A DNA stretch of 64,000 nt. Origin: Hyaloraphidium curvatum SAG 235-1 (lineage: Eukaryota > Fungi > Monoblepharomycota). The notes beneath the pieces were generated by a model. It was not told where the DNA came from. It worked only from the letters and a program-made list of their open reading frames with translations, and did not search any database. The stretch spans positions 186,001 to 250,000 of the forward strand of contig JAIVFI010000040.1 in NCBI GenBank assembly GCA_025558095.1, given 5' to 3'. Made by a program: the position numbers and the translations under genes. Positions 8,403 to 63,951 of this stretch are shown one piece after another. Within the stretch, counting starts at the first letter, position 1. Each line of letters begins with the position of its first letter.

Positions 8403-9697
8403 ATGGCTTCCAATCCTTCCGCAGTCCTAGCGGCGACACCGGGGGCCGGTGCCGTCGTCATGCCCGTTGACGTACCGGCTTTGGAGGCGTACTGCGTGGC
8501 GAACATCCCCGGTTTCAAGGCCGGCATGCTGTCGGTTCCGCGGCCCCCGCGATGCCACTCTGCGCTCAAGTTTCCAACAGGCTCGGTCAATTCGGACTCG
8601 GACAGAGCAACCCGACCTATGTAATCATTGATGGCTCTGGCAGACACTTTATCATGCGGTCGGTAACCGTTCTGCGCGCCTCGTTCACCGCAGTACCTCT
8701 GATCTCACATTTCTGCAGCAAGAAACCGCCGGGGAAACACCTGTCTCCCACGTTGCACAACGTGGCGCGAGAATTTCGCGTGCTCGACGCGCTTGCCAGG
8801 GGCAACACGGGCTACGCTTCGCCCCGCCCGTACACCCTCTGCACGGACGAGGCCGTGATCGGCTCAGATTTCTACGTCATGGAGTACATCGGGCCGGGCC
8901 GCATTCAGACGCTGGAGATTACCCTACCGGGAGCACGGGACGCGGCGGAACGAAGGGCCATGTGGGTCGAATACCTCCGGAAGATGGCCGAGCTGCATCG
9001 GATCGACTACAAGAAGATCGGGCTCTCCGGCTTTGGGAAGGACTCTGGCTACTTCCCGAGGAACATTGCCAACTGGGCCCGGCTGTGCCGGCAGCAGGCG
9101 CAAGTTAAGAGCTTGATCGACGGGAGCGTCATCGGCGAGCCTCCGATGCTGGACGAGATCGTGAGCTGGCTGGAAAAGAACTGCATACCGGACGAGGCGA
9201 GCATTATGCACGGGGATTTCAACTTCCACAACGTCATGTTCGACCCTGCGGAGCCTCGGATAATCGCCGTGCTCGACTGGGAGCTGTGCACGATCGGCCA
9301 TCCCCTGGCGGACCTTGGGATGCCTCTGGCATCCTTCCATGCCCCCGGTTTTCGGCCGCCGCCCGGTACACCTTCACCAGAGGAGGTGATGGCCATTTAC
9401 TGTGCGGCGGCCGGGAGGAAATACCCGATTGAGGGGGTCGCTTTCATAATGGCGTTCAAGATCTTCACGCTCCTAGTCATATCTCAGGGGATCGCCGTTC
9501 GATATCACCAGAAGTGGGTCGCCGAACGGCGGTTCATTGGCAACCACACTGATTCCCCCGAATCAAACAGGCAGAACGCGTCGCCGAGGGCCAAGAACGT
9601 TGCGGAGAACTGGAAAACCTACGCCGACTTCACGCTCAAGCTGATGGGCTACAAGCACAATCTGAGCCCGGAGTTTCGGCTGGGGGCGCACCTGTGA
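8403..9697 (+). CDS. APH-family phosphotransferase (ACAD10/11 N-terminal kinase-like)
   Basis: QFGLGQSNPTY; KKPPGKHLSPTLHNVAREFRVL; FYVMEY; MHGDFNFHN; VLDWELCTIGHPLADL; probable in-frame introns. Confidence 0.9.
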
Positions 9698-24304: not shown

Positions 24305-24541
24305 TTCGATGTTGGGAGACGCCCGGTGCGGCGGAAGAACGCGGGCGGTGAGGCTAAAGTCGATCGATCACCTCCTTTCGCTCGCCGAAACTCGGTCTCT
24401 CCAGGACGGCAGGACCGACGCCTTCCACGTCGGTCCGTTTAGCTCGATGAGCAGGGCGAGCGGATCCTATTGCATCTGACGCGGCCCGTCACACCCTTCC
24501 AAGATCGCGACGCCTCCCGATCGGCCACCCAGAAGCATCTC

Positions 24542-26989
24542 CTAGTCATAGAACCCCTCCTCCTCCCTCTCCCACCTGTGCCCCTCGTCCCCCACCGCAA
24601 ACAGCACCTTGTCCCACCCCCCCGGCGCCCCCACCAACGCACCGAGCGCCAGCGTCCCCCCCACGCTGTCGACGACCATCTGCCTCCCCGTCGCCCCGCC
24701 GCGCTTGGCGACCGCCAAAGGAAGCCACGGCCCCGCGGCACGGGTGGCGGCGAGCAGCCGGAGGAGGCGGGCGAGGTCCCGCGAGGCGGGGGGGCGCAGC
24801 AGGGGCCGGAGGAGCTGCGGGAAGCCGAGGATGGTGTGCGCCACGTGGCGCGTGGGGAGGTCGAGCCCCGCGACGTCGGCGGCGGGGGTGAGCGCGAGGG
24901 AGGGCACGATCCACTGCATCGACCGCAGCAGCGCGTCCGAGCGGAGGTCGGGGTGGAGCTCCCACGTCGCCGAGAGGAGCACGGCGGCGAGGCACGCGGC
25001 GGCGGGGTTGCCCCGCCAGGCGTCGCACAGGGCGATGCGCTGCCCCATGGCGGGGGTCACCCCGGGCGGTAGGGAGAGCGGGGTGCCGCGTGCGGGGGCG
25101 GGAGCGCGCGGGTCGGCGGGGGTGTGGCGGAGGAGCTCGTCGAGGAGGAGGTGGAATGCGCCGTCCGGTGTCGGGTGGCCCGGCAGCGGGCCGAGGAGGA
25201 GGCCCACGGCGACGGCGGCCCACCCGTCGGCGTCGGCGAACGCGCCGCGCCAGCCGTCGTCCTCGTCCAGCGCGGCCTCGAGGAGGGAGAGCGCGGCGGG
25301 GGGGAAGTCGCCGGTGCGGAAGAGGGCGCACGCGGCGGCGCACCACGGGCCGCGCATGTCGGTGGCTTCCTCCTCGTCGACGAGGAAGGACGCCAGCGAT
25401 TCGACGGCGGCGCGCACGACGGGGCCACCGAGGGCACCGCGGCGGCCGGCGCGGTGGGCGTCGGTCCGCTCGGCGAGGAAGGCGGCCACGGCAAGGTACG
25501 CCTCCGAAAGGGTCCGGCGGAGGGGGAGGAGCATGTCGGGTTCCATTTCGAGGGTGAAGAGGGGGGCGATCAGGAGGGGGAGAAGGTGCAGGAGGCCCGG
25601 CAGCTCCGGATCCGAAGTGTCGGGCCCGGGCGGTGAGGCTTCTACGCCGGCTTCGAAGGCGCCTCCGTTGGCCTCCCTCCCAGGCGCCCCCTCGCCGCCC
25701 GGCGGTCCTCCCGACGGTCCGCCGTCCACTTCCCCTCCCTTCTCCGAGTCCAACTCCATCCTCTCCACGCCCTCGATCCCCTCCTCCAGCTCCAACCCGA
25801 CCCTGATCTCGGCCCCGACGACGCCCAGCGCCACCGCCAGCGCCTTCGGCCCGCTCGGCACCCCCTCCCCCGCCTCCCCCTCCTTCCACTCCCAGAACTC
25901 CGCGCCGTACACCTCGCACGCGACGGCCAGCACCCTCCACGTGGCCGTCGACTCGTCGCCCCCCGCTCTGCGCCGCCGCGAGCGGAGCAAAAGACGGGCG
26001 GCGAGCTCCCGCAGGGCCGGGAGCAGCGCGGGGTGCGGCGCGCGGAGGAAGGTGAGGAGGGCGGGGACGACGGGGAGGAGGGGGGCGGGGGAGGGCGTGC
26101 GGAGGAGGGAGGCGAGCGGGGGCAGGAGGGCGAGGAGGATGGGCACGGCGGGGTCCTCACCGAGGGGAGCGGGGGAACGAACGGCAGCACCCGGTTCCGA
26201 TGTCCGGTGGGAGGCGAGGAGCAGCGCGCGGACGAGCAGGTCCGCGGCTGCGAGGGCCGGGCGCGCGTCTCGCCGGGGCAGCGCGGCTGCGGCTGCGAGC
26301 GCCGGCGCGGAGGCCAGCACGGCGTCCAGCGCGGCGGGAACCGCGGGCAGCATGTCTGCAAGCGCGGCGGCGGCCATCTGCGCGGTCGTTTCGCCGTCGG
26401 CGGGCGCGAGACCGGGGTCGGCGGCGGTGCCGTTGGCCGCGGCGGGCCTGCTGGCCCCCTGTTCTGCCTCCTCGTCGTCCGAATCGCCCTCCGGCCCGTC
26501 CTTTCCCTCCTGCGGAACCTCCCTGCCCTTCCCCTTGGCGTCCGCCTCGGGCCCCTTTGGCAGATCACGACCGTCTCCCGCCGCGCCGTCCAGCGCCCCG
26601 CGCAGCAGCCCCACCAGCGGCCTCGCCAGCGCGGCGAAGCCGTCCGGCGCGTCTGCCGCGAGCGGTGCCAGCTGCCGCGCCACCGCGGCGCCCACGCTCG
26701 CCAGCTCCGCGGGGGGCGGCCCATCGTGGGGCGCAGACCGCGCCGCGCCCGCAGACACGAGCCGCCGCAGGAACGCAAAGTCCATCGCCCTCAGCGTCCG
26801 CCGCAGTCCGTCGGCGTCGTCCGGCGACAGCAGCCGCGGCAGCAGCAGCAGCGCGGCGAACTTGGCCTCGTCCGTCGGCGCACCCAGGAGCGCCAGCGCG
26901 CGCCCCAGGCCGTCCGCTGCCGGGCTGCCGCGCCCGCCCTCGCGCGGGCCGCTATCGGGGGCAGCAGATCCGCCGGATATTGCTGGCAT
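24542..26989 (-). CDS. Neurochondrin-family (ARM-like) protein
   Basis: N-terminal LLGAPTDEAKFAALLLLPRLL...MDFAFLRRL; AEIRVGLE; LRRTLSEAYLAVAAFL; 815-aa open frame. Confidence 0.75.
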   Translation of the reverse strand: MPAISGGSAAPDSGPREGGRGSPAADGLGRALALLGAPTDEAKFAALLLLPRLLSPDDADGLRRTLRAMDFAFLRRLVSAGAARSAPHDGPPPAELASVGAAVARQLAPLAADAPDGFAALARPLVGLLRGALDGAAGDGRDLPKGPEADAKGKGREVPQEGKDGPEGDSDDEEAEQGASRPAAANGTAADPGLAPADGETTAQMAAAALADMLPAVPAALDAVLASAPALAAAAALPRRDARPALAAADLLVRALLLASHRTSEPGAAVRSPAPLGEDPAVPILLALLPPLASLLRTPSPAPLLPVVPALLTFLRAPHPALLPALRELAARLLLRSRRRRAGGDESTATWRVLAVACEVYGAEFWEWKEGEAGEGVPSGPKALAVALGVVGAEIRVGLELEEGIEGVERMELDSEKGGEVDGGPSGGPPGGEGAPGREANGGAFEAGVEASPPGPDTSDPELPGLLHLLPLLIAPLFTLEMEPDMLLPLRRTLSEAYLAVAAFLAERTDAHRAGRRGALGGPVVRAAVESLASFLVDEEEATDMRGPWCAAACALFRTGDFPPAALSLLEAALDEDDGWRGAFADADGWAAVAVGLLLGPLPGHPTPDGAFHLLLDELLRHTPADPRAPAPARGTPLSLPPGVTPAMGQRIALCDAWRGNPAAACLAAVLLSATWELHPDLRSDALLRSMQWIVPSLALTPAADVAGLDLPTRHVAHTILGFPQLLRPLLRPPASRDLARLLRLLAATRAAGPWLPLAVAKRGGATGRQMVVDSVGGTLALGALVGAPGGWDKVLFAVGDEGHRWEREEEGFYD

Positions 26990-27225
26990 CGGGGCTTGCG
27001 GGGGAAGGGGGATTCGAAGGGCTCGGCGTTTCCGGCCGCTCCGTCGATCACCGACCGCGGATCGTCGGCACTCGATCTCCGGCGTGGCGGAGGAGCAAAG
27101 CCCGGAGATCCCACTGATGGTACGCCTTGCGGCGACGTTCGATTATGCATAGAGCTACAGCGACCGGCTCCGACCGAAGGCGAACACATGTCTAATCCGC
27201 GACCAGCACTTGGTGCCCCTCAAAG

Positions 27226-28366
27226 CTACGCCCCGATCCGGTCCAACCAATCTCCGATCACCTCCGCCGTCCTCTCCTCCTGGTCGAGGTACGTGAACGC
27301 GTACGAATCCGCCATCTCGACGATCTCGGCCTCGCTCTTCCCGTCCCTCTCGAACTCGGCCTTGAGCCTGTCGACGAATTTCCGCGGGAACACCGACGTG
27401 TCCTCGGGCGCCGTGACCAGCAGCACCGGCCTCCCGAACCCCGGAAAAGTCTTTGCCGCGGCGATCGTGTACTCCTTGAACGCCTTGGGCGGCGAGATGG
27501 CCTTCTTCAGGTCGCGCGCGATCGCGGGGTCGTCGCAGGGCACCGTGAGCAGCTTTTCCGCGACCTGGGGGCGCTTGGAGAGCCAGCCGAGCATCGCGGG
27601 CGAGCGCTGGAACCACGGGCGGCGGCCGAGGGAGAGGACGGCGCGGAGGTGCCATGTGCCGGGGGTGGCGGCGAGGAGGGAGATGAGGGGGTTGAAGAGC
27701 GGGGGGAAGAAGTCTGGAGGGGGTGCAGATGAGCGATGCGAGTGATGGATGAGCTGCCAGGCAGGGAAGACCCACTCTCGAAGGAGTCGCAGGGGAGCAG
27801 CACGAGCCCCTTGAGCATCTCCTTGTTCTTCGAAGCAAAGACTTGCGCGATCGCGCCGCCGGTGTCGCTTCCCACCTGCCAGCGCCCGAACACAAGCAAT
27901 TTAGCTCCCTCCAGTCCTTCGGGACGGAGCAGCTCGACCCACCAGGACGAACTCCTCCCCCTGCAGCGCCTCCCCCGCGATGCCCCTGACGATGTCCGCC
28001 ACCCCCTCGGGATCCAGCCTGGCGTCCGGGTCAAGCGGCGCCCTGTGCCGTCCGAACGGCAGATCGGCGAGCACGCAGCGGTGACCGCGCTCGGCCAGCC
28101 GCGAGGCCAGCGGGACGAACAGGTCGGCGTTGGTCAGGATGGGCTGCCAATCGGAGTCAGCGCGCGTGCGACGGGGACACGCCGGGACGGCGTACGTGGA
28201 TGAAGAGGAGCGGGGTGCGCGGCGCACTGGCGCCAGAGGCCGGGATGTCGATGAAGCTCGCGGGCCCGGAACCGGGGAGGCGGAAGGTGCGGAGGGCCGG
28301 GGCGGGGGGCATCGCGGGGCGGGCGCGCGCGGCGGTGGAGAAGAGGCGCGGAGAGAGGCGGAGCAT
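27226..28366 (-). CDS. Alpha/beta hydrolase with Asp nucleophile (epoxide hydrolase/dehalogenase-like) and mitochondrial-type presequence
   Basis: LFIH|PILTNADLF; DLPFGRHRAPLDPDARL; VGSDTGGAIAQ; LVLLPCDSFE; C-terminal DSYAFTYLDQ. Confidence 0.85.
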
Positions 28367-37311: not shown

Positions 37312-38439
37312 TCAAAGCCGTGCAGCGGCAAACGGGCTGGCCCTCTTGTCGCCCGTCGTGGGCGACATTGGCACGACCTGCTGCCGCTCCCCCGGTGCAA
37401 ACTGCAGCGCCTCCCAGATCCCCAGCTCCCGCAGCGTCGCCTCCAGATCCGGTGCCCCAGCCTCGACGGCTTCCGCGAGCGCAAGCCTAGTCCAGTTCCA
37501 GCACTTGAGCTTGTACGGCACGGCTACGGCGGCAACGGGAAACCCGGCCAGTTCGACCTCGACCTTCCTTTTGCCCGCCAGCAAGGCTGCGGCGTTGGCT
37601 TTCATGAGCGGGACGTACGTTTTGGCGACGAGATCCAGCAGCGCCCGCGTGCCCTGTCCAAGGGGCTCGCCCGGATTCCTCCAGGAACCATCCATGCCCG
37701 AAAGGTCGTCCACATCCTGGACCCACTGGAACGCACGCACGTGCTTGTACTTGAGCACGTCCGACGCGGTCGGGTCGATGGCCAGCTGGCTCAGCATCCC
37801 GTACAGCCCAATGTCGGCTACCGAGGGGCGGGATCCGAACAGGAAGCGCGATTGGTTGAGCTGCAGCTCGATGGCTTCGAGCACCGTGACGAACATGTGC
37901 CGGCAGAAGGGACGGTTTAGGTCCGCGTCCCCGAGGCGCGCGAGGATGTTGGTCTGCCTCCCGCGGAACTGAGCGACGGCCTTGTCGAAGGCCTCGGCGG
38001 GGATAGCGCCGAGCCAGCCGGCCATCTGTCTACGTGAGCACCAAGCCTGGTCGCGCTCCAGGTGCCAACGGTAGTCGAACATGGCGTAGACCAGCACCTC
38101 GTCGGCAAAATCCTCGATCAGCCGCGCAAGGAAGCGGTCAACGGGGTCGTCGGGCAGCAGGCTCCGCTGGCCCGGGTACAGCCGCTCGAGCTCCTCCATG
38201 ATGGGCGTGGTGTCGCTCCAGTAAGCGCCACCGGGCACCTGCAGCACGGGGATGATCCCCTTGTCGGCCGTTTTGAGCTCACCCGACGAGGCGAGGTAGC
38301 CCTGCGGAACGGCAAAGGTGTGCGGGATGCGGCGCGCGCGGAAGGCGGCGCGGAGCTTGAGCGAGAAGGGGGAGCCGGGACCGCCGAGGATGCGGAAGAC
38401 CGACGTCGGGATGGGTGGCAGCGACGATGGAGGATCCAT
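37312..38439 (-). CDS. Glutathione S-transferase-family protein, long bacterial-like form, intronless
   Basis: GGPGSPFSLKLRA; IIPVL; WSDTTPIM; FLFGSRPSVADIGLYG. Confidence 0.88.
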   Translation of the reverse strand: MDPPSSLPPIPTSVFRILGGPGSPFSLKLRAAFRARRIPHTFAVPQGYLASSGELKTADKGIIPVLQVPGGAYWSDTTPIMEELERLYPGQRSLLPDDPVDRFLARLIEDFADEVLVYAMFDYRWHLERDQAWCSRRQMAGWLGAIPAEAFDKAVAQFRGRQTNILARLGDADLNRPFCRHMFVTVLEAIELQLNQSRFLFGSRPSVADIGLYGMLSQLAIDPTASDVLKYKHVRAFQWVQDVDDLSGMDGSWRNPGEPLGQGTRALLDLVAKTYVPLMKANAAALLAGKRKVEVELAGFPVAAVAVPYKLKCWNWTRLALAEAVEAGAPDLEATLRELGIWEALQFAPGERQQVVPMSPTTGDKRASPFAAARL

Positions 38440-38769
38440 GGCGATGGAAAGGCTTGTCGATTCGGCCGTTATCCCTTGGAGCTTCGTTGAGTTGAGCCCC
38501 ACTATAGCCCCTTGACTAGCCCCGACTTGGCTGTCGGATCGAAGGGTAGGGCCGTTTATCCGTGCACGCTCCGGAGACTACCAGTGAAGTCAGTCGACAG
38601 CTTGGAACAGTCTATTCGTCGGCCGGATCCGAAGTTAAGAGCGTCCACCATCCCGTCTACTCGCGTGTAGGCGCGCCGCCCACGACTCACAGTCAGCGCA
38701 GTAGTGTCCCCCAAACAAACCGACGCGTCGCGATTCGCTGAGCACGCGCAACCGTCCCGGCTGTTCCTC

Positions 38770-42138: not shown

Positions 42139-42318
42139 CCGTGGTGCGAGCGGGACGGCGTTGGACCTTTGCCTCGTTGCTGACGTGGTGCTTGGCTTAC
42201 GGGATGATTGAGGGCCGAAGGGGCGAATAGATTCCCCGCGACGCCGCCAAGTCAACAACCACGCGAGCCTCTGCTGCCCAGCACCGCTCCTTCCGCCGCC
42301 CGGCAGCGGCACCCGGCG

Positions 42319-43503
42319 ATGCTAGCCACGATGCGCCCCGCGCGCCCCTTCCTCGCCCTCCTCCCCGCGCTGACCGCCGCGCCCGACGCGCGCCGCTCGT
42401 CGACCTCCGCGCCGCCCCGCCCGCTGACGCTCGCCACGCTCAACACGTACCTGATCCCGCCGTTCCTCTCCAAGCGCCACGCGGCGCTGCCGCCCGCGCT
42501 GCGCGCCGTCCCCCGCGCCGGGCGGCTGGCCGCGTGGCTGCCCGCCTCGGGCGCCGACCTCGCCTTCCTCCAGGAGGTCTGGGGCCCCGGCACGGACCTC
42601 CTGAACCGCGTGCCCGGCTACTCCTCCGGCCCGCCGGACGTGCGCAGCGTGGTCACGGAGGGCGGGTGGGTGCCCGCGGGCGCCGCCAGGACCGCGTGGG
42701 ACTGGTGGCGCATGTGGAACGCCGCAACGGGGGGCCTGTGGTTCGCTTCCAAGGACGGCTCGGTGCCGCCGGCGAGGTGGACCGGCAGGCACACGTACAC
42801 CGTGAGCGCGACGCCGAGCAGGAAGGGGGTGCTGGGGAGCCTGTGGGACGTGTCGGGGCACTGGGGCAAGGGGGCCAGATGGCTCTGCGTGTTCTCCACG
42901 CACCTGGACGCGTGGAACGACGGGAACAAGCGGGTGCAGCTGAAGGAGATGGCGGACTTTGTGGGCAGGTCGCTGGCGGGCCCCGTGCGGTCCGCCGTCG
43001 AGGCCGCCGAGCGGGAAGGCTGGGGCGGCAGGCCCGAGAGCTGGACAAAGGGCCCCATCGGCGCGCACCACGCCGACCCCATGGCGAGGGTCGCCGTGGT
43101 GCTGGTCGGGGACTTCAACATCGCCGCGCCCGCCTCGGCCGACGCCGCGGTCGACGGCTCCGCGTCGGGCCATTCGGCGCTGTACGCGTCTGAACTCCTC
43201 GGCATGATTCCACCGCGCAAATTGGTGGACCTTTTCGCCGCCTTCCGCGGGCAAGACGACCGCACGGCCACCTACGACAAGGTGAACAACGCTCTGGTGG
43301 AGCCCGGCCCGGGGAACCACGGGCGGATCGACCACGTGCTCGGTCTAGGCGCATTCGAGGACCCGGTGTCGGGGCGGACGGTGGAGCTGATGCCGCTCAG
43401 GTGCGTGGGGGCAGAGGTGGTGAGGCAGCAGCCGGGGTTGGAGCTGTCGGATCACTACCCGGTGGTGGTGAGGCTGGTTCCGGAGCCGAGGGCCGAGGAC
43501 TGA
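42319..43503 (+). CDS. Endonuclease/exonuclease/phosphatase-family protein (sphingomyelinase-like)
   Basis: ATLNTY; FLQEVW; RKGVL; FSTHLDA; VGDFN; RIDH; SDHYPV. Confidence 0.92.
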   Translation: MLATMRPARPFLALLPALTAAPDARRSSTSAPPRPLTLATLNTYLIPPFLSKRHAALPPALRAVPRAGRLAAWLPASGADLAFLQEVWGPGTDLLNRVPGYSSGPPDVRSVVTEGGWVPAGAARTAWDWWRMWNAATGGLWFASKDGSVPPARWTGRHTYTVSATPSRKGVLGSLWDVSGHWGKGARWLCVFSTHLDAWNDGNKRVQLKEMADFVGRSLAGPVRSAVEAAEREGWGGRPESWTKGPIGAHHADPMARVAVVLVGDFNIAAPASADAAVDGSASGHSALYASELLGMIPPRKLVDLFAAFRGQDDRTATYDKVNNALVEPGPGNHGRIDHVLGLGAFEDPVSGRTVELMPLRCVGAEVVRQQPGLELSDHYPVVVRLVPEPRAED

Positions 43504-43597: not shown

Positions 43598-44145
43598 ATG
43601 CCGACCCCCCTCCTCTCCCGCCCCGCGGACCTCGCCTTCGCCGCCTTCTTCTCCGTCCTCTTCGTGGCGGTGACCCTCGTCGACGGGCAGGTCGTCTATC
43701 CCGACGCGTTTCCCCCCTGGGCGCGCCGGCTGTACGCGAAAGCGTGGGAACGCGCGCCGCATCCCCTCCAGAAGGAGGCCCGGGCGTTCTACCGCTTCGG
43801 AATCATGGGCACGGCGGTGTTTTGCGTGGCGCCGGCGAGCGCGTGGTTGATCAGGGGGCTGTATCTCGGTGGGCCTCCCACCCTCGCAACTACTCCGACG
43901 TAGGCTGACGACGCGTTTTCGGGAAAGACTCCCCCGCGATAAACCTCCCCGGCCTCGTGGTCTCGGTGCACATCCTGACCAACATGGTCACCGGCGACGC
44001 GGACGTGCTGTTCGGCCCGCACGAGGGGTACGACACGAAAAAGAGGCTGGGGGTGGTGGGGCTGCATGCGGTGCCGTATGCGGCGGCGCTGGCGTTCGCG
44101 TATAGGTGCGGGGGGAGGTTGCTCGAGGGGCGGCGGGGAAGCTAG
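43598..44145 (+). CDS. EXPERA/TMEM97-like membrane protein
   Basis: LLSRPADLAF...TLVDGQVVYP motif; 4 hydrophobic segments; one intron near 43869-43928. Confidence 0.65.
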
Positions 44146-44327
44146 CTAGTGCGGGAGGGAGCGACGCCGGGGGTGTGGTTATCTGTTTCCGTGATCTCGC
44201 TTTCGGTGGGTGCGGTGTCCGTTCGGGGCTCGGATGTCCGGAGATCCGGGTGGGAAGTGGAGTTGATGGTTGGGGATCGCGGGCGTTTGGCGCGCCCCCG
44301 GAGTCAACAACCTCGTCGCGGATCCAC

Positions 44328-46529
44328 ATGCTCGGCGAGGGCACCGCGTCCCCGCGCGGCCGGGTTGACGCGTATCGCAGGCCACCCGTGCCGGCGCGGG
44401 GCCCCGCGGACGCGCGCGCCCCGCAGAAACGGTCGCCTCAACACCCTTTGCTGCAACTGGATTTCGAGCAGGTGGCGGTGCTCCCGCGGACGCCGTCGCA
44501 CCGCGAGGCCCGCAGTCTGTACGCGCCGGCCGCCAAGCCGTGGGGAGAGCGGGACCGCGGGTCGGACGGGCACCGTGCGGACGCGGGCGACCGGGAGCGG
44601 GACGGCGCGGGCCGGGCAAGGGAGCCCGCGCGGCCAACCGCGGACTACCTGCCGAGGAGCGACTCGGAGAGGGACTACCGGGCACGCGACGAGCCCGTTG
44701 CTGAAAGAAGGCACCGCGCGGACGCGGCGGACTACCGGCCGCGGACCCAAGCGGCGGCCCCCCGCTTGCGCACCGAATCTTCGCGCGACTACCGCCCGAG
44801 GGCCGAGCCCGCGCCCGAAACCAGGCGCAGGAGCGAGCCCGCCGCCGAGTACCGGCTGGAACGGGAACCGCTGCCCGCCGAGGAGCCCTTGAGGAACTAC
44901 CGTCACGAGCGGCCTGATCCCGACGCGGACTACCGCCGGCGCGCCGAGCCGGAAGTGGGCTACCGGCCCGCGGCGGACCCGCCCGGGGACTACCGCCCCA
45001 GGACCATCTCCCGCAGCAGCAGTCGCCACCCGGTTGACGAGGACTACCTCCCGGAACCGGCCCGGGCCGCCGCGCGCCCCCCGCCATCCCGGGAACGCCC
45101 CGCCCGCACCCCGCAGGCGGACGACTACCACCTCCGGCTCCCCGAGGAGCACCGCCGCCCCTATCCCGCGGAAACCTACCGCCCGCGGGCGGAGGCCCAG
45201 TCCGAGTACCGCGTGCCCGAGCGCGCGGACGAATCGTACCGCTCCCCGCGGCGGTACACGGACGGCGACGTGCGGGGATCGCGCGATTTCGGGGCGCTGG
45301 CTCCCCGTGCGGCGAGGGAGCCGGTGCCTGTCGCTGTGCGGGAGCCGGGCTACGCGCGGGAAGCCGCGCCTACCTCGCGGGAACGGGCCTACCGGAGGGA
45401 CCCGTCGCCCCTTTCGCGGGAGCAGGCCTACGCGAGGAACCCGCTGTCTCCTTACCGCGAACCCCCCATTGTTCGCGAACCTGCGCCCGCGCCGCGCGAG
45501 GTGCCGTACTCGCGCGAACCGGCCCCGCTGCCGCGGGAGTACGCCTACGCCCGCGAACCCCTCCCCTTGCCCCAGGATCCGCTTCCCTCCCGCGAGCCCT
45601 CCTACGCCCGCGAACCCCCGCCCCTCCCCCGCGCGCGCACGTACACCCGCGATCCGTCACCCCTGCCCCGCGACCCCTTACCCTTGCCTCGCGAACCGGC
45701 CTACGAGCGCGATCTCGCCCCGGCACCGCGCGAACACCCCCGCGCGACCGCACCCCGCGAGCGTGGCTCCGCAATCTTCTCGTGGGACGCCCCCCCGCGC
45801 GTGCCGGCCTACGCGAGGGAGCCCCCGCCGCCGTCGAGGGCGTCGGCGTCGCCGCCGTACGTGAGGCGGGATCCGTCGCCGAGGAGGGATCCTTCCCCGC
45901 GCCGGAGAGATCCGGAGCCCGTGCGCGAACCGGTGCCGGTGCAGAGGGGGTATCGGACCGCGGCGAGGGAGGTCGATGTGCCTGCGTACCGGGAACCGCG
46001 CGAGCGCGATCGGGAACGGGAGAGGGACGGGGACCGGGAGCGCGAACGGGCGTACCCACTTGACCCGCACCCCCGGCGCGACCCGCTCCTCCAGCCCTCG
46101 GCCCGCGAGCAGCCGGGGAGTAGCTCGGCGTCGTACCTCGTCGGCCCGCGCGGGCAGGTGCACGGCCGGCTTGCGGGGGAGGATTACCTGGTGCGTCGAC
46201 CTGGCTCATCCGATCGGTGGTGGGGAGTGCTGATCTCCCCTTCCGTGCACGAGCAGGACCGTCCGCAGCAATCGTACCGCGCCGACGCCTACAGGGAGAA
46301 CCTCCCTCCCTCCTCCCGCCCGTCGGAACCGACGACGGTGGCGTACCTGCGCAAGTACGGCCTCTCCTCCACATCGCCCGAGCCCGACGACCGGCCCCGC
46401 CGCGCGGTGCAGGGGTACGGGGCGGGGAAGCCGCCGAGGGAGGAGGAGTTCACGAGGGTGCTGGACGTGGAGAGGATCAGGAGGCTGCCGAAGCTGCCGG
46501 CGGTGGACGGCGGGAGGGGGTATTACTAG
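44328..46529 (+). CDS. Low-complexity R/E/P/Y-rich protein with C-terminal STAN-like and TIM-like motifs (STIL/Ana2 candidate)
   Basis: TTVAYLRKYGL and VLDVERIRRLPKL near the C-terminus; internal REP/YAREP repeats; probable in-frame intron 46191-46256. Confidence 0.6.
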   Translation: MLGEGTASPRGRVDAYRRPPVPARGPADARAPQKRSPQHPLLQLDFEQVAVLPRTPSHREARSLYAPAAKPWGERDRGSDGHRADAGDRERDGAGRAREPARPTADYLPRSDSERDYRARDEPVAERRHRADAADYRPRTQAAAPRLRTESSRDYRPRAEPAPETRRRSEPAAEYRLEREPLPAEEPLRNYRHERPDPDADYRRRAEPEVGYRPAADPPGDYRPRTISRSSSRHPVDEDYLPEPARAAARPPPSRERPARTPQADDYHLRLPEEHRRPYPAETYRPRAEAQSEYRVPERADESYRSPRRYTDGDVRGSRDFGALAPRAAREPVPVAVREPGYAREAAPTSRERAYRRDPSPLSREQAYARNPLSPYREPPIVREPAPAPREVPYSREPAPLPREYAYAREPLPLPQDPLPSREPSYAREPPPLPRARTYTRDPSPLPRDPLPLPREPAYERDLAPAPREHPRATAPRERGSAIFSWDAPPRVPAYAREPPPPSRASASPPYVRRDPSPRRDPSPRRRDPEPVREPVPVQRGYRTAAREVDVPAYREPRERDRERERDGDRERERAYPLDPHPRRDPLLQPSAREQPGSSSASYLVGPRGQVHGRLAGEDYLVRRPGSSDRWWGVLISPSVHEQDRPQQSYRADAYRENLPPSSRPSEPTTVAYLRKYGLSSTSPEPDDRPRRAVQGYGAGKPPREEEFTRVLDVERIRRLPKLPAVDGGRGYY

Positions 46530-48000
46530 CCCGCGTGGGCGGGCGGGGGCCGCGGATGCGGTGGAGGGCATGCTGGTGTTGTTGTAGCGTCGGTTTGGGG
46601 CAAGGCTAGGTGCGATTGATGTGTGATCTTGATGGGGTCGCGGACGCCTCCGCCTCCGCCTCGGCCTCGCCGAATCGACCGATTCCACGCCCGCGAACTG
46701 CAATTGCATGCACTAAAGTTGCCGAACGATAGAGGAGAGGGAATTGGGGCGTAAGCCTCGATGGGGAGGAGGCCGTGCGAGCAGCTCCAGCTCAGTCAAG
46801 TCGCGCGCCTTTGACCCCATACCACGGCCGCCGCCGGCCGATTCCGACCTCCTGCGCACCATCTCCCCGCCAATTCGTTCGATTGCCGCCGTTTCGGATG
46901 CCGTTGCGCCGGATCCGGCTCCCCAGGAGGAGCGCCTGAAGGTGGCTGATCGCGGCACCGGGTCGGTCGGGCGGTCGAGGCGCCCGGGCGTCGCCTGGCG
47001 GCCATCCGCCTCCGGGGTCCAGGGAGACAGTGGGAAAAGCTGGAGAGCAAAGAAGATCGGGGTTCCACGGCGCTGGGAGCAGTCCGCGGGGACGAAGCCG
47101 CGGAAGCCGCCTCCTTTGCCACATGTGAAGAGCGCAGGAAACTCGAAAATGGCCCCGTCGATGCTGGAACGGCGCCGATGGGCTCGTGAGGTGGGGGATC
47201 GCACGTACGGATTTTCTCGCCACCGAACGGGGGCGCCCGGGCCGCGGATCGCGCCCCCGGGGCGGGTCTCCGGTGCCGTGCGGTTCGGGAACCGTGCCGA
47301 CGACGCAACACCATGCACGCGAGGAAACGAATCAGAGCCTGTGCGAGCACGGCGGGCATGAGGGAAGAACTGTGCGGTTCCGTAGCGGCCGAATAAAGCC
47401 AGAGCGGCGTCGGCCCGTGCTCAGAAGTGCGGTCCCCGGTCGGAGCGTGCACCGGTCTCCTGGCTTTCCGTCCTTGAGGAGGGCTTCAGTTGGCCCGGCG
47501 GGTGCGAGATCGGCCTCGGACTTGCTCGACCGGTGCCGGGAGACCTTTCCTATGCGTGGGAGGCATTCCAACGGCGGCATCCCATGCGGCGGCCCGGGGC
47601 GGGAACCAGGGCCCGATCGGACGCCGCTTCGGCCGATTCCGACGCGAAAGTGCCCCAGCGCCGGCCGGGGGCGGATGCCTGATGATGCTGGCGGTCCCAG
47701 AGTGCCGAGGACGAAACTCTCCAGATCGGCAGGCCGTGACTAACGGGAAGGGACTTTGGTGGTCGGACGGTGCGTCACGGCCCGGGCTGGTGCGCTCCAA
47801 AGCCAAAAGGCGCGGGCCTGCCCCCCACTCATTCTCCTCATCACAGCTGCAACGTCGAGCAAGACCTCCGTTGGCAACTGTGACAGGGCCAAGTCGCCCC
47901 AAGAACCCCTCGCAAGTCAAGCAAGTCGTCTCCGGCGCAGTCGTCGGCAGCGTCTTCTTCGCAAGTCAAGCTTCTCGTAACCGAAGGAAAACCATCCACC

Positions 48001-59582: not shown

Positions 59583-62500
59583 ATGGACGCGGAGGCGGAT
59601 GCCGCCGAGCTGCCGGCGTCCGGCGCCATCGCTCGGTGGGGGAAAGGGGAATCGGACCACTTGTGGGTTTCCTGCTTGTTTTGTTTGTAGGCGCTCTGAC
59701 GCGTCGGCAGCCTCGAGGCGGTCAAGGCCGCGTTGGGCCGCGACCGGTCCCGTGGGGAGCCACTACCACGCAATGTGCGGTCGCTGCTCGAACGCGTCGT
59801 TCGCGCCGCCGTGCACGCGCAGCCCGACGGCGCGGCGATGGGCGCCGCCGCCGCCGCGGACTTCCTGAAGAAGGCGTCGCTCGCCGCGGGCCCGCCGCCC
59901 GGAGACGGCGTGGCGCCGGCGGGCGACGAGCTGGCGATCACGGCCGCCGCGGACGCCGACGCGTTCGGCTCGTTCGTGGCGGACCTGCTGTGGGTGCTGG
60001 ACGCGGAACTGGGCGACTGGGACAAGCCGCCAAAGGACCTGGCCCGCGATCCGGCGAGGGCGCTGGAGCAGGTCAAGAAGGACCTGCCGCCGCCACGGCT
60101 GCGGCTGGTCGAGCTGGTGAAGCAAATCGTGGTGAGTTGCGAAGCGGAACGCCCTCACGACAGTTTGCCAACAAAGCTCCTTCGCCGGGGTGCCAGAAAA
60201 ACGAGTGCGTCAGCGCGACCCTCCTCCGGCTCCGCCTGGAAACGGAGCTGCTGTTCTTCGCCGGCTTGCTGCCCACCGACATGGGCAACTTCGCGCGCAA
60301 GACCATCCGCAACAACACGGCGCAGCTCTACAAGCAGCAGAAGTTCAACCTCCTCCGCGAGGAGTCCGAGGGCTGGGCGCGCGTCATCGTCGAGGTCGGC
60401 GGCAACTGCGTCAACGCAGACGATCTCGCGTCGACGTACGACGCCACGCCGGCGGAGCTCGAGGCCATCATGCGGAACCGCGTCTCGACCGTGCTCCGCA
60501 ACCTGCGCGCCCTCGTGGGCTACTTCGACCTCGATCCCAACCGCGTGCTGGACGTCATCATCGACATCTTCATCGCCAACGTGCGGGACTACTACGATTT
60601 CTTCCTGCGGCTGCTGGAGGAGTCGCCGTGGGGCCGCAAGACCTCGTGGAAGGGCGACGCCTCGGCCCCAGTTGCCCCCGTGCCGACCGATACCCCCATG
60701 CGCGACGAGGACGCCAGCGACGACGAAGGCGAGGCCGGGCAGGACGACGAAGGGCCGCAGCCGATCCCGCTGCTGGCCCAGATCCTGGGCTTCCAGTACC
60801 AGTACTACGCGGCCCGCCTGGCTTCCAGCTCCGCGCCGGCGGGCTGGCCCTTCACGGACGATCTGCCTCCGCGGGACCGGCATCCAGGGGAAGTACCGAC
60901 GGACCTGCAGCTCGTGGCGGCGCTGCTGATCCGCCGCGGGCTGGTGCGGATCGAGGACCTGTGGGTGCACATGGGGAGGGGCATCGGGACGGGGAGCGAG
61001 GACGCGGACGCAGCGGATTTGGAGGCGCATTTCAAGGAGTGGCAGGATGCGCAGAGGAAGAAGGCGAGGGAGAACAGGGGGGCCAGCGCGCTGGCGGTGA
61101 GTTGCTGTTTTTGATCCCAGTGGTCATGTCCCTTATTTCGTCGTGTCAACAGGAAGCGGCACCGTTGGCCGACGAGTCGGCGCCCAGATACCCACCTCCC
61201 CCTGCGACCGCAGCCGAGGAGGGCAAGAAGCCCGAGCCGCCGCCGCCAAAGGCTTCTTTACCCTCCCGACCTGCCCCACGCCTGATCGACCAGAAGGCCA
61301 ACCTCTGCTGCGCGCTCCTGGCAGTCGGCGCCTACCACCAGGCGCTTTGGATCTTGGACCGGCTTCCCAAGCTACCGTACGTGCAGCCCGAGATCTCCGC
61401 CCTCCTCTGCCGGGCAATCCACGTGATGATCGAACCCCTCTACGCCCCTTTGCGGCCGCTGCCCAAGGTCGTCTTCACCCCTTCGAGCCTCCAAATCTCC
61501 CCCACGATTCACTGGCGGGACGTGGATGTCCCGCGCACCGCTCGCCGCGGGCAGCGTGTCTACCGCTACTTCTATTCGGAGTGGACCGAGGGCCTCCCCT
61601 CGTGGGACCGCCCGCAGGCCCTTCTCCACGGACTTTCGGGCGTGCTCCGCTATGTCACTGTGCAGGGGCTCGGCAGCGACCCGCGACTGTGGGCCAAGCT
61701 GGTCCGCATCGCCGCCGCGCACATCCGTACCTCCATCCTCCCGCGCGGACCCGTGGGCTCGGAGGAGCTCCTGCCCGAGCTCCGCCCCTGGCTTGTCATC
61801 GTTTCGCGGTACCTTCTGCCGGCGCTCAGCACGACGTACGCCAACCCGGGCCTGGCCAATGAGATGTGGAATCTCCTCTCGCAGCTCACGTGGCCCATCC
61901 GGCAGACCCTTTACCGGGACTGGGCCAAGCGGTTTGACGAGGTGCCGGAGCTCGAGTACCACAAGGAAAAGTGCACGAGGGACACGCAGTACTTCATGAA
62001 GCGCATCTCGCAGGAGACGGTGCGGCAGCTGGGCCGCGTGCTGGGCAAGGTGGTCCACGGCAACCCCGTGATCGCGTACCCGATCGTCCTGGCCACCATT
62101 GAGGAGTACTCCAACTTCATCGCGCCGATCGTCGAGTCGTCCAAGTACGTGACGCACTTCGGAATCGATGTCCTCAGCGACTCGCTGCTGGCCAAGCTCG
62201 AGGGCGACCGCGACCGGCTCAAGGCCGACGGCGTGAGCGTGGAAAAGTGGTTCATGAACATCGCGATGTTTGCCTCGGCGGCCCTCAAGAAGCACTCGGA
62301 CCGGATGGAACTCTCGGGCTTCCTCAAGCTCGTCTACGACCGCCTGACCGAGAAGGAGTCGGTGGCGGACCTCACCATCCTCGCCGAAATCATCAGCAAG
62401 ATGGCCGGCATCGAGAGCATCGAGAGCCTGTCGGACGCGCAGCTCGAGGCGCTCAGCGGCGGCGACACCCTGCGCCGCGAGGGCGTCTACGGCGCCGAGA

Positions 62501-63951
62501 TCAACCGCAACACGCGCAAGAGCAGCGTCAAGCTCCGCGACACGCTGGTCGAGAACCGGCTGGCAACGGCCATGGCGCTCGCGATCGGCCGCGAACGCGC
62601 GGTGGTGGCGCACAGCGACATTGCCGAGCACCTCAAGATGATCTCGAGCATGTACGACCAGTGCCAGGACAGCCTGGTGCAGTACGCCGAGTTCCTTGCG
62701 GGCAGCCTGGACGCCGCGGCGTACGGCGAGGTGATGCCCATGCCGGACGAGCTGGTGCTGGACTATCACCTGGAGCCGGACGTGGCCTTCCACCTGGCCA
62801 GGCCCAAGCTCAACCACGCCATTCGGGCGGCGGACGCGGCGAAAAAGGCACAGGCGGCGCTGGCCAACGCGACAAAGCCGGCTGTGGCCGCACCGGAGAA
62901 GGAAAAGCCGGCGGAAAAGAAGGAGGCCTCGGTCGAGAACGGCACGGACAAGGCGGGTTCGGCCATGGATGTCGACGAACCGGCGGTCAAGGTGGAAACG
63001 GCACCGGTGGAGCAGAAGGAGGCGGACGTGTGGCATCCGGGTCTCCTGGAGATCATCCGTCGGGTCGAACGGATCCTGCCTCAGCCGACGTGGAAGGGCA
63101 TCAGCCCCAACTTCTACGTCACCTTCTGGCAGCTCTCGCTCTACGACATCCACGTGCCCAAAGCTCGGTACCAGAGCCAGATCGATACGGAGCGGCAGAA
63201 GATGAAGGAACTCGACCCGACGGATCAGAAGTCCTTCAAGAGCGACAAGGCGGGGCAGGAGAAGCGGCGCATGTACGAGCGCTCGGCGACCCTCGTCAAG
63301 ACCTTGGAGCAGGAGCTCAGGGAGCAGCAGGAGAACCACAAGAAGGTGCTTGCGCGGCTGCAGCGCGAAAAGGACCACTGGTTTGCGGCGGACGGTGGGT
63401 CTATGAACCGTGTCCATGACGACCTTTTGCTCATGCTCCATGAACGGGATACAGGTCAACGCCATAGCGCCACGAACCTGCTATCGCAGCATTGCCTCGT
63501 CCCGCGGGGCTTCTTTTCGCACACCGACGCCGTATACTGCGCCAAGTTTGTCTTCCTCATCCACAAGATGGGAGCAGCCAACTTTTCCACCATTGCACTG
63601 TTGGATCGGGTGAGTTCTCTCTTGCGACACGCGCCGCCGTTTTTCGGCAACTTATTCAATCGGCAGAGTCTGTCCGACATCACGATCTTCGTGATCGGTG
63701 CCACGGAAAACGAGGCGAGGCATTACGGTCGCTGGCTCTCGGAGGTCCTTCACACGCTGCACCGCTGGTACCTGAGCCGGAAGCTGTTCGAGGAGGAGGG
63801 CAGGGGCCCGGGCGAGGGCTTGCCCGGCCTTGTGATGGTGTCCGGTCGTCGTGGGCCGGACGACAAGACACCTGCCCCGCTGGACTACGCAGGTTTCCAA
63901 AGGATTCACGGCAAGTGGTTCGACAGGATTCAGCTGGTGAGTCCGCCGTAA
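59583..63951 (+). CDS. THO2: THO complex subunit 2, runs off the window
   Basis: LYKQQKFNLLREESEG; GYFDLDPNRVLD; MKRIS; FYVTFWQLSLYDIHVP; CLVPR..FS..DAVYCAKF. Confidence 0.97.

What the first reader, a model, noticed from the sequence alone, without database searches (positions are those of the whole stretch)
46150..46529. STIL/Ana2/SAS-5-like centriole protein (STAN and TIM motifs) outside animals
Seen: TTVAYLRKYGL and, about 30 aa later, VLDVERIRRLPKL near the C-terminus of a disordered protein; after splicing, EDYL|DRPQQS lies upstream. Established (motifs recalled from memory): human STIL STAN has ALKYLNENQLS...[11 protein letters not shown], and STIL ends in the TIM motif LDVKRLRQLPKLF; the family is classically described as animal-restricted. 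Inference: the same motifs in the same order suggest a fungal STIL homologue and an older PLK4-STIL-SAS6 module.
Basis: partly seen in the sequence, partly recalled or inferred. Interest (0 to 1): 0.85.

Follow-up and report, generated by a model that had tools for sequence, protein, structure and literature searches.

The report
Second STIL-like centriole protein, fungus-type genome
A real, spliced gene encodes a floppy proline/arginine-rich protein whose tail carries two short motifs of the animal centriole-duplication factor STIL, but it is an extra, stripped-down relative: the genome's ordinary STIL gene lies on another contig and has no second motif (TIM) of its own.

Summary
TTVAYLRKYGL (46332-46364) and VLDVERIRRLPKL (46458-46496) lie in the last exon of a gene at 44328-46529 (+). 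A contig of a public run lacks exactly the predicted 66-nt GT..AG intron (46191-46256).

Only three relatives exist among 1.84 billion representative proteins. They conserve these two motifs, and two of them also conserve an N-terminal motif, SPQHPLLxLDFExVAVLP.

HMMs built from two animal STIL last exons, fetched from metagenomes, score both motifs in the right order above 1994-2000 of 2000 shuffles in all four proteins. Genome-wide E-values are not significant.

- STIL and PLK4 were already reported in chytrid fungi (PMC6559791).
- This genome has a canonical STIL on contig C8, with an N-terminal domain and both STAN halves. It ends ...MSFASVEYLRRYGLDTGI* and no TIM was found in the 10-kb C8 locus.
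- The window protein lacks the STIL N-domain, the first STAN half, a coiled coil and a conserved PRxxPxP.

I read it as a lineage-restricted STAN-C/TIM paralogue, probably a SAS-6-binding cartwheel cofactor (inferred). The genome also holds SAS-6 and PLK4. The scan had already noted a STIL/SAS-5 candidate on another piece of this genome.

The parts
44328..46529 (+). Whole gene as modelled: ATG at 44328 to TAG at 46527-46529. It has two coding exons, 621 + 90 codons. The 5' end is not verified by reads.
   Evidence: ORF and translation. Contigs of run X1 cover 44864-46878 in pieces. Orthologues P0001, P0002 and P0003.
44328..46190 (+). Exon 1. It encodes a disordered Arg/Pro/Ala/Glu-rich region with reiterated DYRPR / YAREP.P.PRE-type units. 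No Pro-free stretch exceeds 28 aa, so no coiled coil is plausible.
   Evidence: Composition and repeat counts; no Pfam family.
44433..44486 (+). N-terminal conserved motif SPQHPLLQLDFEQVAVLP. Its partner is unknown.
   Evidence: Near-identical in P0001 and P0003. The motif HMM finds nothing in the STIL loci L009, L012 or L013.
44502..44528 (+). Short motif REARSLYAP, resembling TREARSMIAP of P0001 and P0003 (noted by eye; MAFFT did not align it). The ALLRKVxDxVGxEE helix-like block that precedes it in those two proteins is absent here.
   Evidence: Sequences; alignment A5, where the block ALLRKV... is present in P0001/P0003 only.
46191..46256 (+). 66-nt intron, GTGCGT...CAG, with a CTGAT branch-like site. 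It is in frame and stop-free.
   Evidence: Joint 46189->46256 'skips 66, GT..AG' in a contig of run X1; sequence.
46257..46529 (+). Exon 2, 90 codons plus stop. It carries both STIL-like motifs and is comparable in content and size to the last exon of an invertebrate-type STIL gene (L012 3442-3729).
   Evidence: Collinear BLASTP with the L012 exon: 29.6 bits, E 8e-7 for the single comparison.
46332..46364 (+). STAN C-half core, TTVAYLRKYGL. Family consensus is [ST]T[VLM]AY[LM]RKYGL. It aligns with ...[14 protein letters not shown] of vertebrate STIL and MSFASVEYLRRYGL of this genome's canonical STIL. A Glu sits at the position of human S1116 in 3 of 4 orthologues.
   Evidence: Only 3 genome-wide hits of a loose DNA pattern, two of them this gene and the C8 STIL. 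AF2 helix 26-33.
46443..46508 (+). TIM-like motif, EEFTRVLDVERIRRLPKLPAVD. Compare QVLDIARLKELPKLL* (L012), ILDVKQLRQLPKLF* (L013) and human FLDVKRLRQLPKLF*.
   Evidence: Fungal TIM HMM against six-frame L012: E 5.5e-4, and 0 of 300 shuffled sets reach that score. Animal TIM HMM against the six-frame window: top hit, E 0.0028. 0/2000 shuffles. Human peptide in PMC4477857. AF2 helix 71-75.

Best explanation
The locus is an expressed two-exon gene for an intrinsically disordered protein of about 711 aa. Its function probably resides in a few short linear motifs.

The last exon carries the C-terminal half of the STAN motif (core Y[LM][RK][RK]YGL) and a TIM motif (VLD..R[IL]..L.KLP). These are the two C-terminal signatures of the STIL/Ana2/SAS-5 centriole-duplication family.

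The gene is not the canonical STIL of this organism. That gene is on contig C8, and no TIM was found in or near it. The window gene is best read as a lineage-restricted STIL C-terminal paralogue, perhaps derived from duplication of the last STIL exon.

Inferred mechanism, not shown: the two motifs fold into short helices on binding SAS-6. In animals the PLK4-phosphorylated STAN binds SAS-6, and in C. elegans the SAS-5 TIM binds the SAS-6 coiled coil. The protein would thus act with the TIM-less canonical STIL in cartwheel assembly, while the N-terminal motif SPQHPLLxLDFExVAVLP engages a further, unknown partner.
For: Gene reality:
- A spliced contig exists.
- There are three orthologues with the same C-terminal motif blocks.

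Motif identity with STIL:
- A DNA pattern modelled on the C8 STIL C-terminus found only two hits in 241 million metagenome records. Both are animal-type STIL last exons, with ALKYL upstream and ...LPKL[LF]* at the end.
- One of them (L013) differs from the human peptides printed in PMC4477857 at only 4 positions.
- Window exon 2 aligns collinearly with the L012 exon.
- The TIM HMM built from the four orthologues hits the L012 exon at E 5.5e-4. This is independent of how L012 was chosen, and 0 of 300 shuffled sets reach the score.
- Animal STAN-C and TIM HMMs beat 1994-2000 of 2000 shuffles in all four orthologues, at the conserved blocks and in order.

Canonical STIL elsewhere, with no TIM found:
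-.

Context:
- SAS-6 and PLK4 PB1 are present.
- AF2 shows disorder with helices only at the two motifs.
- The role of STAN/TIM in SAS-6 binding comes from the literature (PMC4113102; abstracts).
Against: - All sequence support rests on motifs of 7-22 aa.
- Scaled to the genome, the animal TIM HMM gives E about 1.4, and the animal STAN-C HMM does not rank the 807-aa ORF at all.
- phmmer with the L012 exon gives only 8.4 bits.
- Profile-profile comparison aligns only 14 columns, with probability 22%.
- The profile search of 1.84 billion proteins returned no recognised STIL.
- Genome searches with the animal exon or its alignment found nothing, though the prefilter also missed the C8 STAN.
- The STAN N-half, coiled coil, PRxxPxP and STIL_N are absent or not conserved.
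- No binding, localisation or phenotype data exist.
- The C8 gene model has no read support, and the 10-kb locus was scanned only as open frames of 20 aa or more, so a missed terminal exon carrying a TIM cannot be fully excluded.
Confidence: 0.6

Rival explanations
1. It is the organism's STIL/Ana2 orthologue itself, of the short Ana2/SAS-5 type without the N-terminal domain.
For: STAN-C and TIM lie in the right order at the C-terminus. Ana2 and SAS-5 are described as much smaller than STIL and poorly conserved (PMC4113102; PMC4471874 abstract). The genome has SAS-6 and PLK4.
Against: A gene on contig C8 has STIL_N-type similarity, a recognisable STAN N-half (IRANLIAARYA) and a closer STAN C-half (MSFASVEYLRRYGL). 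It is the better orthologue. The window protein has no coiled coil and no conserved PRxxPxP. The family is confined to four sequences in 1.84 billion.
Confidence: 0.1
2. The resemblance is chance or convergence of short motifs in a fast-evolving, low-complexity protein whose function has nothing to do with centrioles.
For: Genome-scaled E-values are not significant. hhalign probability is 22%. No STIL appeared in the whole-library search. The protein is 37% Arg+Pro, so R/K/L/P-rich motifs are favoured. The scan covers very many windows, so multiple testing is heavy.
Against: The shuffle controls keep composition and still give 0-6 of 2000 for each motif in each of four orthologues, in the right order. 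The residues invariant in the family (Y..RKYGL; LD..R..L.KL) are those shared with the animal exons. The exact heptad YLR[RK]YGL occurs at only two of the three genome-wide matches of a looser pattern; the other is the C-terminus of the canonical STIL. Where it was looked for, the family was seen only in a genome that has SAS-6 and PLK4.
Confidence: 0.2
3. It is a decoy or regulator: a STAN-C/TIM mimic that competes with STIL for SAS-6 and limits cartwheel formation rather than promoting it.
For: It has the same motifs but lacks the domains that link STIL to PLK4 and CPAP, namely the coiled coil and PRxxPxP. In 3 of 4 orthologues an acidic residue replaces the serine aligned with human S1116, the PLK4-regulated site. 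That would make binding independent of PLK4.
Against: This is pure inference from motif content. Nothing distinguishes a positive from a negative role.
Confidence: 0.1

Closest known systems
Vertebrate STIL (human Q15468-type; last exon seen in metagenome locus L013)
   Same: C-terminal order: STAN C-half core Y[LM][KR][KR]YGL, then a TIM, LD..[RKQ]L..LPKL, near the end. Both motifs sit in a disordered tail. The partner genes SAS-6 and PLK4 are present.
   Different: The window protein has no STIL N-terminal domain, no ALKYL-type STAN N-half, no coiled coil, no conserved PRxxPxP and no KEN box. Glu stands where human S1116 is in 3 of 4 orthologues. TIM is followed by 10 more residues instead of ending the protein. 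The protein is 711 aa against 1287 aa.
Drosophila Ana2 / C. elegans SAS-5
   Same: Short, poorly conserved, largely disordered family members without the STIL N-domain, recognised mainly by STAN and TIM (PMC4113102).
   Different: Ana2 and SAS-5 have a central coiled coil that oligomerises, and in Ana2 it binds Plk4 (abstracts). They are the only family member in their genomes. Here no coiled coil is seen and a canonical STIL coexists. No Ana2 or SAS-5 sequence could be fetched for direct comparison.
Canonical STIL of the same genome (G000 contig C8, locus L009, minus strand, about 7100-4553)
   Same: It shares the heptad YLR[RK]YGL and a little upstream similarity (EQL.G.A.P in P0003). Both tails are disordered and Arg-rich.
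   Different: C8 has the N-domain, both STAN halves and the MSFAS serine. It ends 4 residues after YGL, and no TIM was found within its 10-kb locus. The window gene has a TIM but not the rest.
Batrachochytrium dendrobatidis STIL candidate EGF76849 (Ito et al. 2019, PMC6559791)
   Same: A published precedent for a STIL-family gene in a flagellated fungus, found by hmmsearch.
   Different: Its sequence could not be fetched here. It is unknown whether it resembles the C8 type or the window type, or whether it has a TIM.

Membership tests
STIL/Ana2/SAS-5 | STAN motif, C-terminal half (…[ST]xxY[LM][KR][KR]YGL, next to human S1116) | tested here: met
   TTVAYLRKYGL is invariant in pattern in 4 orthologues. 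It aligns with [14 protein letters not shown] / MSFATHQYMKRYGL of animal STIL exons. Animal STAN-C HMM: 6/2000 shuffles reach the score for window exon 2, and 0/2000 for the other three. The serine equivalent to S1116 is not conserved (Glu or Gly instead).
STIL/Ana2/SAS-5 | STAN motif, N-terminal half (A[LI]ALKYLxxxQL[ST]) | tested here: not met
It is present in L012 (NALALKYLKDEQLTEL), L013 (NAIALKYLSENQLS) and, degenerate, in C8 (ANLIAARYA). In the window family only a loose [DP]Y..RP is shared.
STIL/Ana2/SAS-5 | TIM motif at the C-terminus | tested here: met
   RVLDVERIRRLPKLP against QVLDIARLKELPKLL*, ILDVKQLRQLPKLF* and human FLDVKRLRQLPKLF*. HMM tests. Genome-scaled E is only about 1.4.
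STIL/Ana2/SAS-5 | Central coiled coil (oligomerisation, PLK4/ZYG-1 binding) | tested here: not met
   The longest Pro-free stretch in the window protein is 28 aa and rich in Gly/Asp/Arg. The short helix-like block ALLRKVxDxVGxEE of P0001 and P0003 is missing here. No dedicated coiled-coil predictor was available.
[quoted passage not shown]
   There are two matches in window exon 1 against 0.67 expected from shuffles, and none in P0001-P0003. The motif definition comes from PMC3776556.
STIL proper | STIL N-terminal domain (Pfam PF15253) | tested here: not met
   There is no Pfam hit in the window protein or its orthologues. The only hit in the genome is on contig C8.
STIL/Ana2/SAS-5 | Significant sequence-profile similarity to recognised members | tested here: inconclusive
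   The whole-library profile search found only 3 orthologues and no STIL. hhalign gave 22% probability over 14 columns. Targeted and shuffle tests are significant.
STIL/Ana2/SAS-5 | Co-occurrence with SAS-6 and PLK4 | tested here: met
   SAS-6_N at E 3.3e-22 on C14. Plk4_PB1 at E 1.9e-13 on C17. The CPAP G-box is inconclusive at E 0.028.
STIL/Ana2/SAS-5 | Binds SAS-6, is phosphorylated by PLK4, localises to the procentriole and is required for duplication | not testable with these tools

The most novel reading that the evidence does not exclude
A 'split STIL'. In this fungal-type lineage the C-terminal SAS-6-binding module of STIL (a second STAN C-half plus the only TIM found) has moved to a separate, disordered protein that works in trans with a TIM-less canonical STIL. 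Its STAN core carries Glu in place of the PLK4-regulated serine in 3 of 4 orthologues, which would make part of the STIL-SAS-6 contact independent of PLK4.
Probability: 0.3. Interest if true: 0.65.

Novelty: new variant of a known kind. Interest (0 to 1): 0.45.

Why it matters
STIL outside animals is not new, because chytrid STIL and PLK4 are already in the literature. What may be new is a second protein that keeps only the STAN C-half and the TIM, alongside a canonical STIL in which no TIM was found.

If that holds, nature has separated two parts of STIL that are always studied together. It would then be possible to ask what TIM does on its own, whether STAN and TIM can act in trans on SAS-6, and how much of the STIL-SAS-6 contact needs PLK4 phosphorylation.

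It also shows that centriole factors made of short motifs in disordered proteins escape Pfam and ordinary orthology searches. Presence/absence tables for such genes in early-diverging fungi are therefore likely incomplete.

Tried and rejected
- Pfam on both exons and on all three orthologues: nothing.
- Word-indexed homology searches: window C-terminus gave only P0001; P0001 C-terminus gave only itself; C8 STAN end gave nothing.
- Metagenome scan with the family alignment: 138 pattern matches, none confirmed.
- ESM Atlas: no usable hit for exon 2 or for the C8 N-domain exon.
- PDB sequence search with exon 2: only chance hits. The second N-domain exon of C8 and an upstream L012 ORF gave nothing.
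- Own-genome search for paralogues with exon 2 or the four-sequence profile: only the locus itself.
- Own-genome search with the animal exon or its alignment: the prefilter found no candidates. This is uninformative, because it also missed the C8 STAN.
- The N-terminal motif HMM found nothing in the STIL loci.
- Rejected: EDYL|DRPQQS as the STAN N-half, because it is not conserved.
- Rejected: PRxxPxP as a CPAP site, because it is not conserved.
- Rejected: an RE/RD-rich tract shared with C8 as evidence of paralogy, because it is low-complexity.
- Rejected: a TIM-like LLDLRRLPP string about 100 nt beyond the C8 stop. Its spacing is wrong and it lies antisense to the end of the neighbouring gene.
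- The organism's identity could not be established. Tool outputs are anonymised, and 'fungal' rests on other readers' notes.
- The exons were never joined. Exon 2 was searched alone by reference. The only full-length query was the unspliced, stop-free read-through, also by reference.
Full report
**1. What is at the coordinates**

The + strand of 44106-46529 is one open frame in DNA of about 70-75% GC. The first in-frame ATG is at 44328.

I laid the contigs of the only public run that holds this stretch (X1, guessed to be RNA) on 43900-46900. One 720-nt contig joins 46189/90 to 46256/57 and skips 66 nt with GT..AG ends. Other contigs cover 44864-46878 without differences. The intron is in frame and stop-free, so retention would add 22 residues.

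Exon 2 was used alone by reference. The only long query was the unspliced read-through, also by reference.

**2. The protein and its relatives**

Exon 1 (621 codons) is 19.5% Arg, 17.9% Pro and 12.9% Ala. It has reiterated DYRPR and YAREP-type units, and no Pro-free stretch is longer than 28 residues. Pfam finds nothing in either exon.

The family is very small:
- The word-indexed search found one relative, P0001 (573 aa).
- A profile search of 1.84 billion representative proteins found three in all: P0001 (E 4e-21), P0002 (300 aa, 4e-7) and P0003 (666 aa, 9e-6). It found no recognised STIL.
- These come from two assemblies of public runs and from environmental metagenomes, at 53-58% GC.

Between these otherwise unalignable proteins only short blocks are conserved:
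- SPQHPLL[KQ]LDF[ED].VAVLP near the N-terminus (window, P0001, P0003).
- ALLRKVxDxVGxEE, in P0001 and P0003 only.
- TREARSMIAP in P0001 and P0003, with REARSLYAP at the corresponding place in the window protein (read by eye; MAFFT did not align it).
- [ST]T[VLM]AY[LM]RKYGL (all four).
- E[ED][FY]TRVLD[LV][DE]R[LI].RL.KLP.V[DE] (all four).

AlphaFold2 on exon 2 with this alignment gives a disordered chain (mean pLDDT 60). Its only helices are residues 26-33 and 71-75, which are the two motifs. This is the anatomy of a disordered protein that works through short linear motifs.

**3. Is the genome one that needs a STIL?**

Yes. The 31.9-Mb assembly has a SAS-6 N-domain (E 3.3e-22, contig C14) and a PLK4 cryptic polo box PB1 (E 1.9e-13, contig C17). 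The CPAP G-box search was inconclusive. An earlier scan note also reports an outer-arm dynein; I did not check it.

**4. A canonical STIL lies elsewhere in the genome**

I therefore searched the genome with Pfam STIL_N and found one weak hit on contig C8 (E 0.009 genome-wide; 7.7e-4 as a single protein).

The same exon matches PDB 5OI9 at E 2.7e-4. PMC5928214 identifies 5OI9 as the Trichoplax STIL N-terminal domain.

Reading the minus strand of the C8 locus (L009) gives, in order:
- N-domain exons.
- A Pro/Gln-rich region with a hydrophobic helix (LALQQQMWMAWMAQLFARM).
- An Arg-rich tail ending ...STEQIRANLIAARYAPRH...ADMSFASVEYLRRYGLDTGI*.

That gene has the N-domain and both halves of a STAN motif, and it stops four residues after YGL. 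No TIM-like sequence occurs in the open frames (20 aa or more) of any of the six frames of the 10-kb locus, with either the fungal or the animal TIM HMM. Downstream lies a convergent gene.

**5. Getting real animal sequences**

No tool returned a named STIL, so I wrote a degenerate DNA pattern for MSFA[ST]xxY.x[RS]YGL, modelled on the C8 C-terminus. I scanned 241 million metagenome records with it and got exactly two hits.

*L012* has an upstream exon with ...NALALKYLKDEQLTEL... Its last open frame reads ...GMSFATHQYMKRYGL-(48 aa)-QVLDIARLKELPKLL*.

*L013* has one large exon with ...NAIALKYLSENQLS...[21 protein letters not shown]...VGTILDVKQLRQLPKLF*.

PMC4477857 prints the human peptides VGTFLDVKRLRQLPKLF (aa 1271-1287), DRSTVGL(pS)LISPN and SPNNM(pS)FATKK. 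This has three consequences:
- L013 is a STIL last exon.
- L013 differs from human at 4 of about 30 positions, so I take it for a non-human vertebrate and used only that exon.

The result also confirms that the C8 C-terminus is a genuine STAN C-half.

**6. Tests of the window gene against these sequences**

- Window exon 2 and the L012 last exon align collinearly from YLRKYGL/YMKRYGL to LPKL. The score is 29.6 bits, E 8e-7 for the single comparison. Scaled to a six-frame genome this is about 0.6 (my arithmetic).
- A TIM-only HMM from the four fungal-type proteins hits the L012 STIL exon at 14.2 bits, E 5.5e-4, among the 417 open frames of that locus. The next best is E 3.6. None of 300 shuffled replicas exceeds 10.0 bits. 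This test is independent of how L012 was chosen.
- An animal TIM HMM (L012 + L013) has the window gene as its top hit in the six-frame window, at 14.1 bits, E 0.0028, with the next best at 3.5 bits. That is E 1.4 if scaled to the genome.
- With composition-preserving shuffles of each orthologue's C-terminal part, the animal STAN-C HMM is reached by 6/2000 shuffles (window) and 0/2000 (the other three). The animal TIM HMM is reached by 0/2000 in all four. The best domains always sit at the conserved blocks and in STIL order.
- A loose DNA pattern for Y-[LIMF]-x-x-Y-G-L has three matches in the whole genome: the C8 STIL end, the window gene and an unrelated YIQQYGL. The reversed control also gives three, so the count itself is not remarkable. 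What matters is which genes carry the exact heptad.

Weaker or negative results:
- phmmer with the L012 exon ranks the window ORF first and the C8 exon second of 1411 frames, but at only 8.4 and 6.9 bits.
- hhalign aligns only the 14-column STAN core, at probability 22%.
- Genome searches with the animal exon or its alignment produced no candidates. This also failed for the C8 STAN, so it says little.

**7. What the gene lacks**

- No STIL N-domain.
- No conserved STAN N-half.
- No plausible coiled coil.
- No conserved CPAP-binding motif. PRxxPxP occurs twice against 0.67 expected from shuffles, and never in the orthologues.
- No KEN box.
- At the position of human S1116, the PLK4 site needed for SAS-6 binding according to the abstracts, three of the four proteins have Glu and the fourth has Gly followed by Glu. 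The following Thr is invariant.

**8. Reading**

Shown:
- A real spliced gene.
- A tiny family defined by short motifs.
- Two of these motifs match the STAN C-half and the TIM of animal STIL, in order and position, better than composition allows.
- A canonical STIL elsewhere in the genome, in which no TIM was found.
- SAS-6 and PLK4 are present.

Inferred:
- The protein is a STIL C-terminal paralogue. Its last exon has the same content as the last exon of the L012 STIL, which suggests an exon-level duplication.
- It contacts SAS-6 through the two motifs and acts with the canonical STIL.

Whether it promotes or restrains cartwheel assembly cannot be told. I put 0.6 on the paralogue/cofactor reading, 0.1 on it being the orthologue proper, 0.1 on a decoy role and 0.2 on chance or convergence.

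**9. Novelty**

The headline 'STIL outside animals' is already known:
- Ito et al. 2019 list Batrachochytrium STIL EGF76849 and PLK4 EGF81909, and state that centriole biogenesis proteins are found in chytrids.
- A 2026 survey speaks of STIL loss in Neocallimastigomycota.
- Pachinger et al. 2025 use STIL/ANA2 as a core centriolar marker in assessing which fungi have centrioles.

I found no description of a second, N-domain-less STAN-C/TIM protein beside a canonical STIL with no detectable TIM. That is a new variant of a known kind, resting for now on motif-level evidence.

Noticed in passing
G000 contig C8, locus L009 about 7100-4553 (minus strand); outside the window: Canonical STIL gene: N-domain exons (Pfam STIL_N, PDB 5OI9), a Pro/Gln-rich middle, and both STAN halves. 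It ends ...MSFASVEYLRRYGLDTGI* and no TIM motif was found anywhere in the 10-kb locus. It is probably the gene behind scan note s1-699657.
   Followed up: partly
L013 211-1065 (minus strand), metagenome contig Ga0065711_1035294: A 22.5-kb vertebrate contig (non-human by 4 differences from published human STIL peptides) sits in a metagenome. Its STIL exon has a second, internal TIM-like string (ESSIHILKDLKSKPKLF) about 60 aa before the terminal ILDVKQLRQLPKLF.
   Followed up: no
L002 7148-7609 and L011 8871-9266: In both relatives a Ras/Roc small GTPase gene lies 0.7-1.5 kb upstream of the orthologue on the same strand. No Ras gene was recognised among the ORFs next to the window gene, so local synteny seems not to be kept.
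   Followed up: partly
window 24500-27800: The GC-richest stretch of the window (72-73%) has several overlapping ORFs of 464-847 aa on both strands. It was not examined.
   Followed up: no
window 42208-43503 (+), 60190-63951 (+), 8552-9697 (+), 6418-8286 (+), 37312-38502 (-): Neighbouring genes recognised by Pfam: an endonuclease/exonuclease/phosphatase-family protein just upstream, THOC2 (Tho2, THOC2_N), an APH-type phosphotransferase, a WD40/PROPPIN protein and a GST-like protein. None is related to centrioles.
   Followed up: partly
G000:C14:400979-401332 and G000:C17:117097-117420: SAS-6 N-domain (open frame of 701 aa) and a PLK4 cryptic polo box PB1. They are candidate partners for interaction tests with the window protein.
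   Followed up: partly
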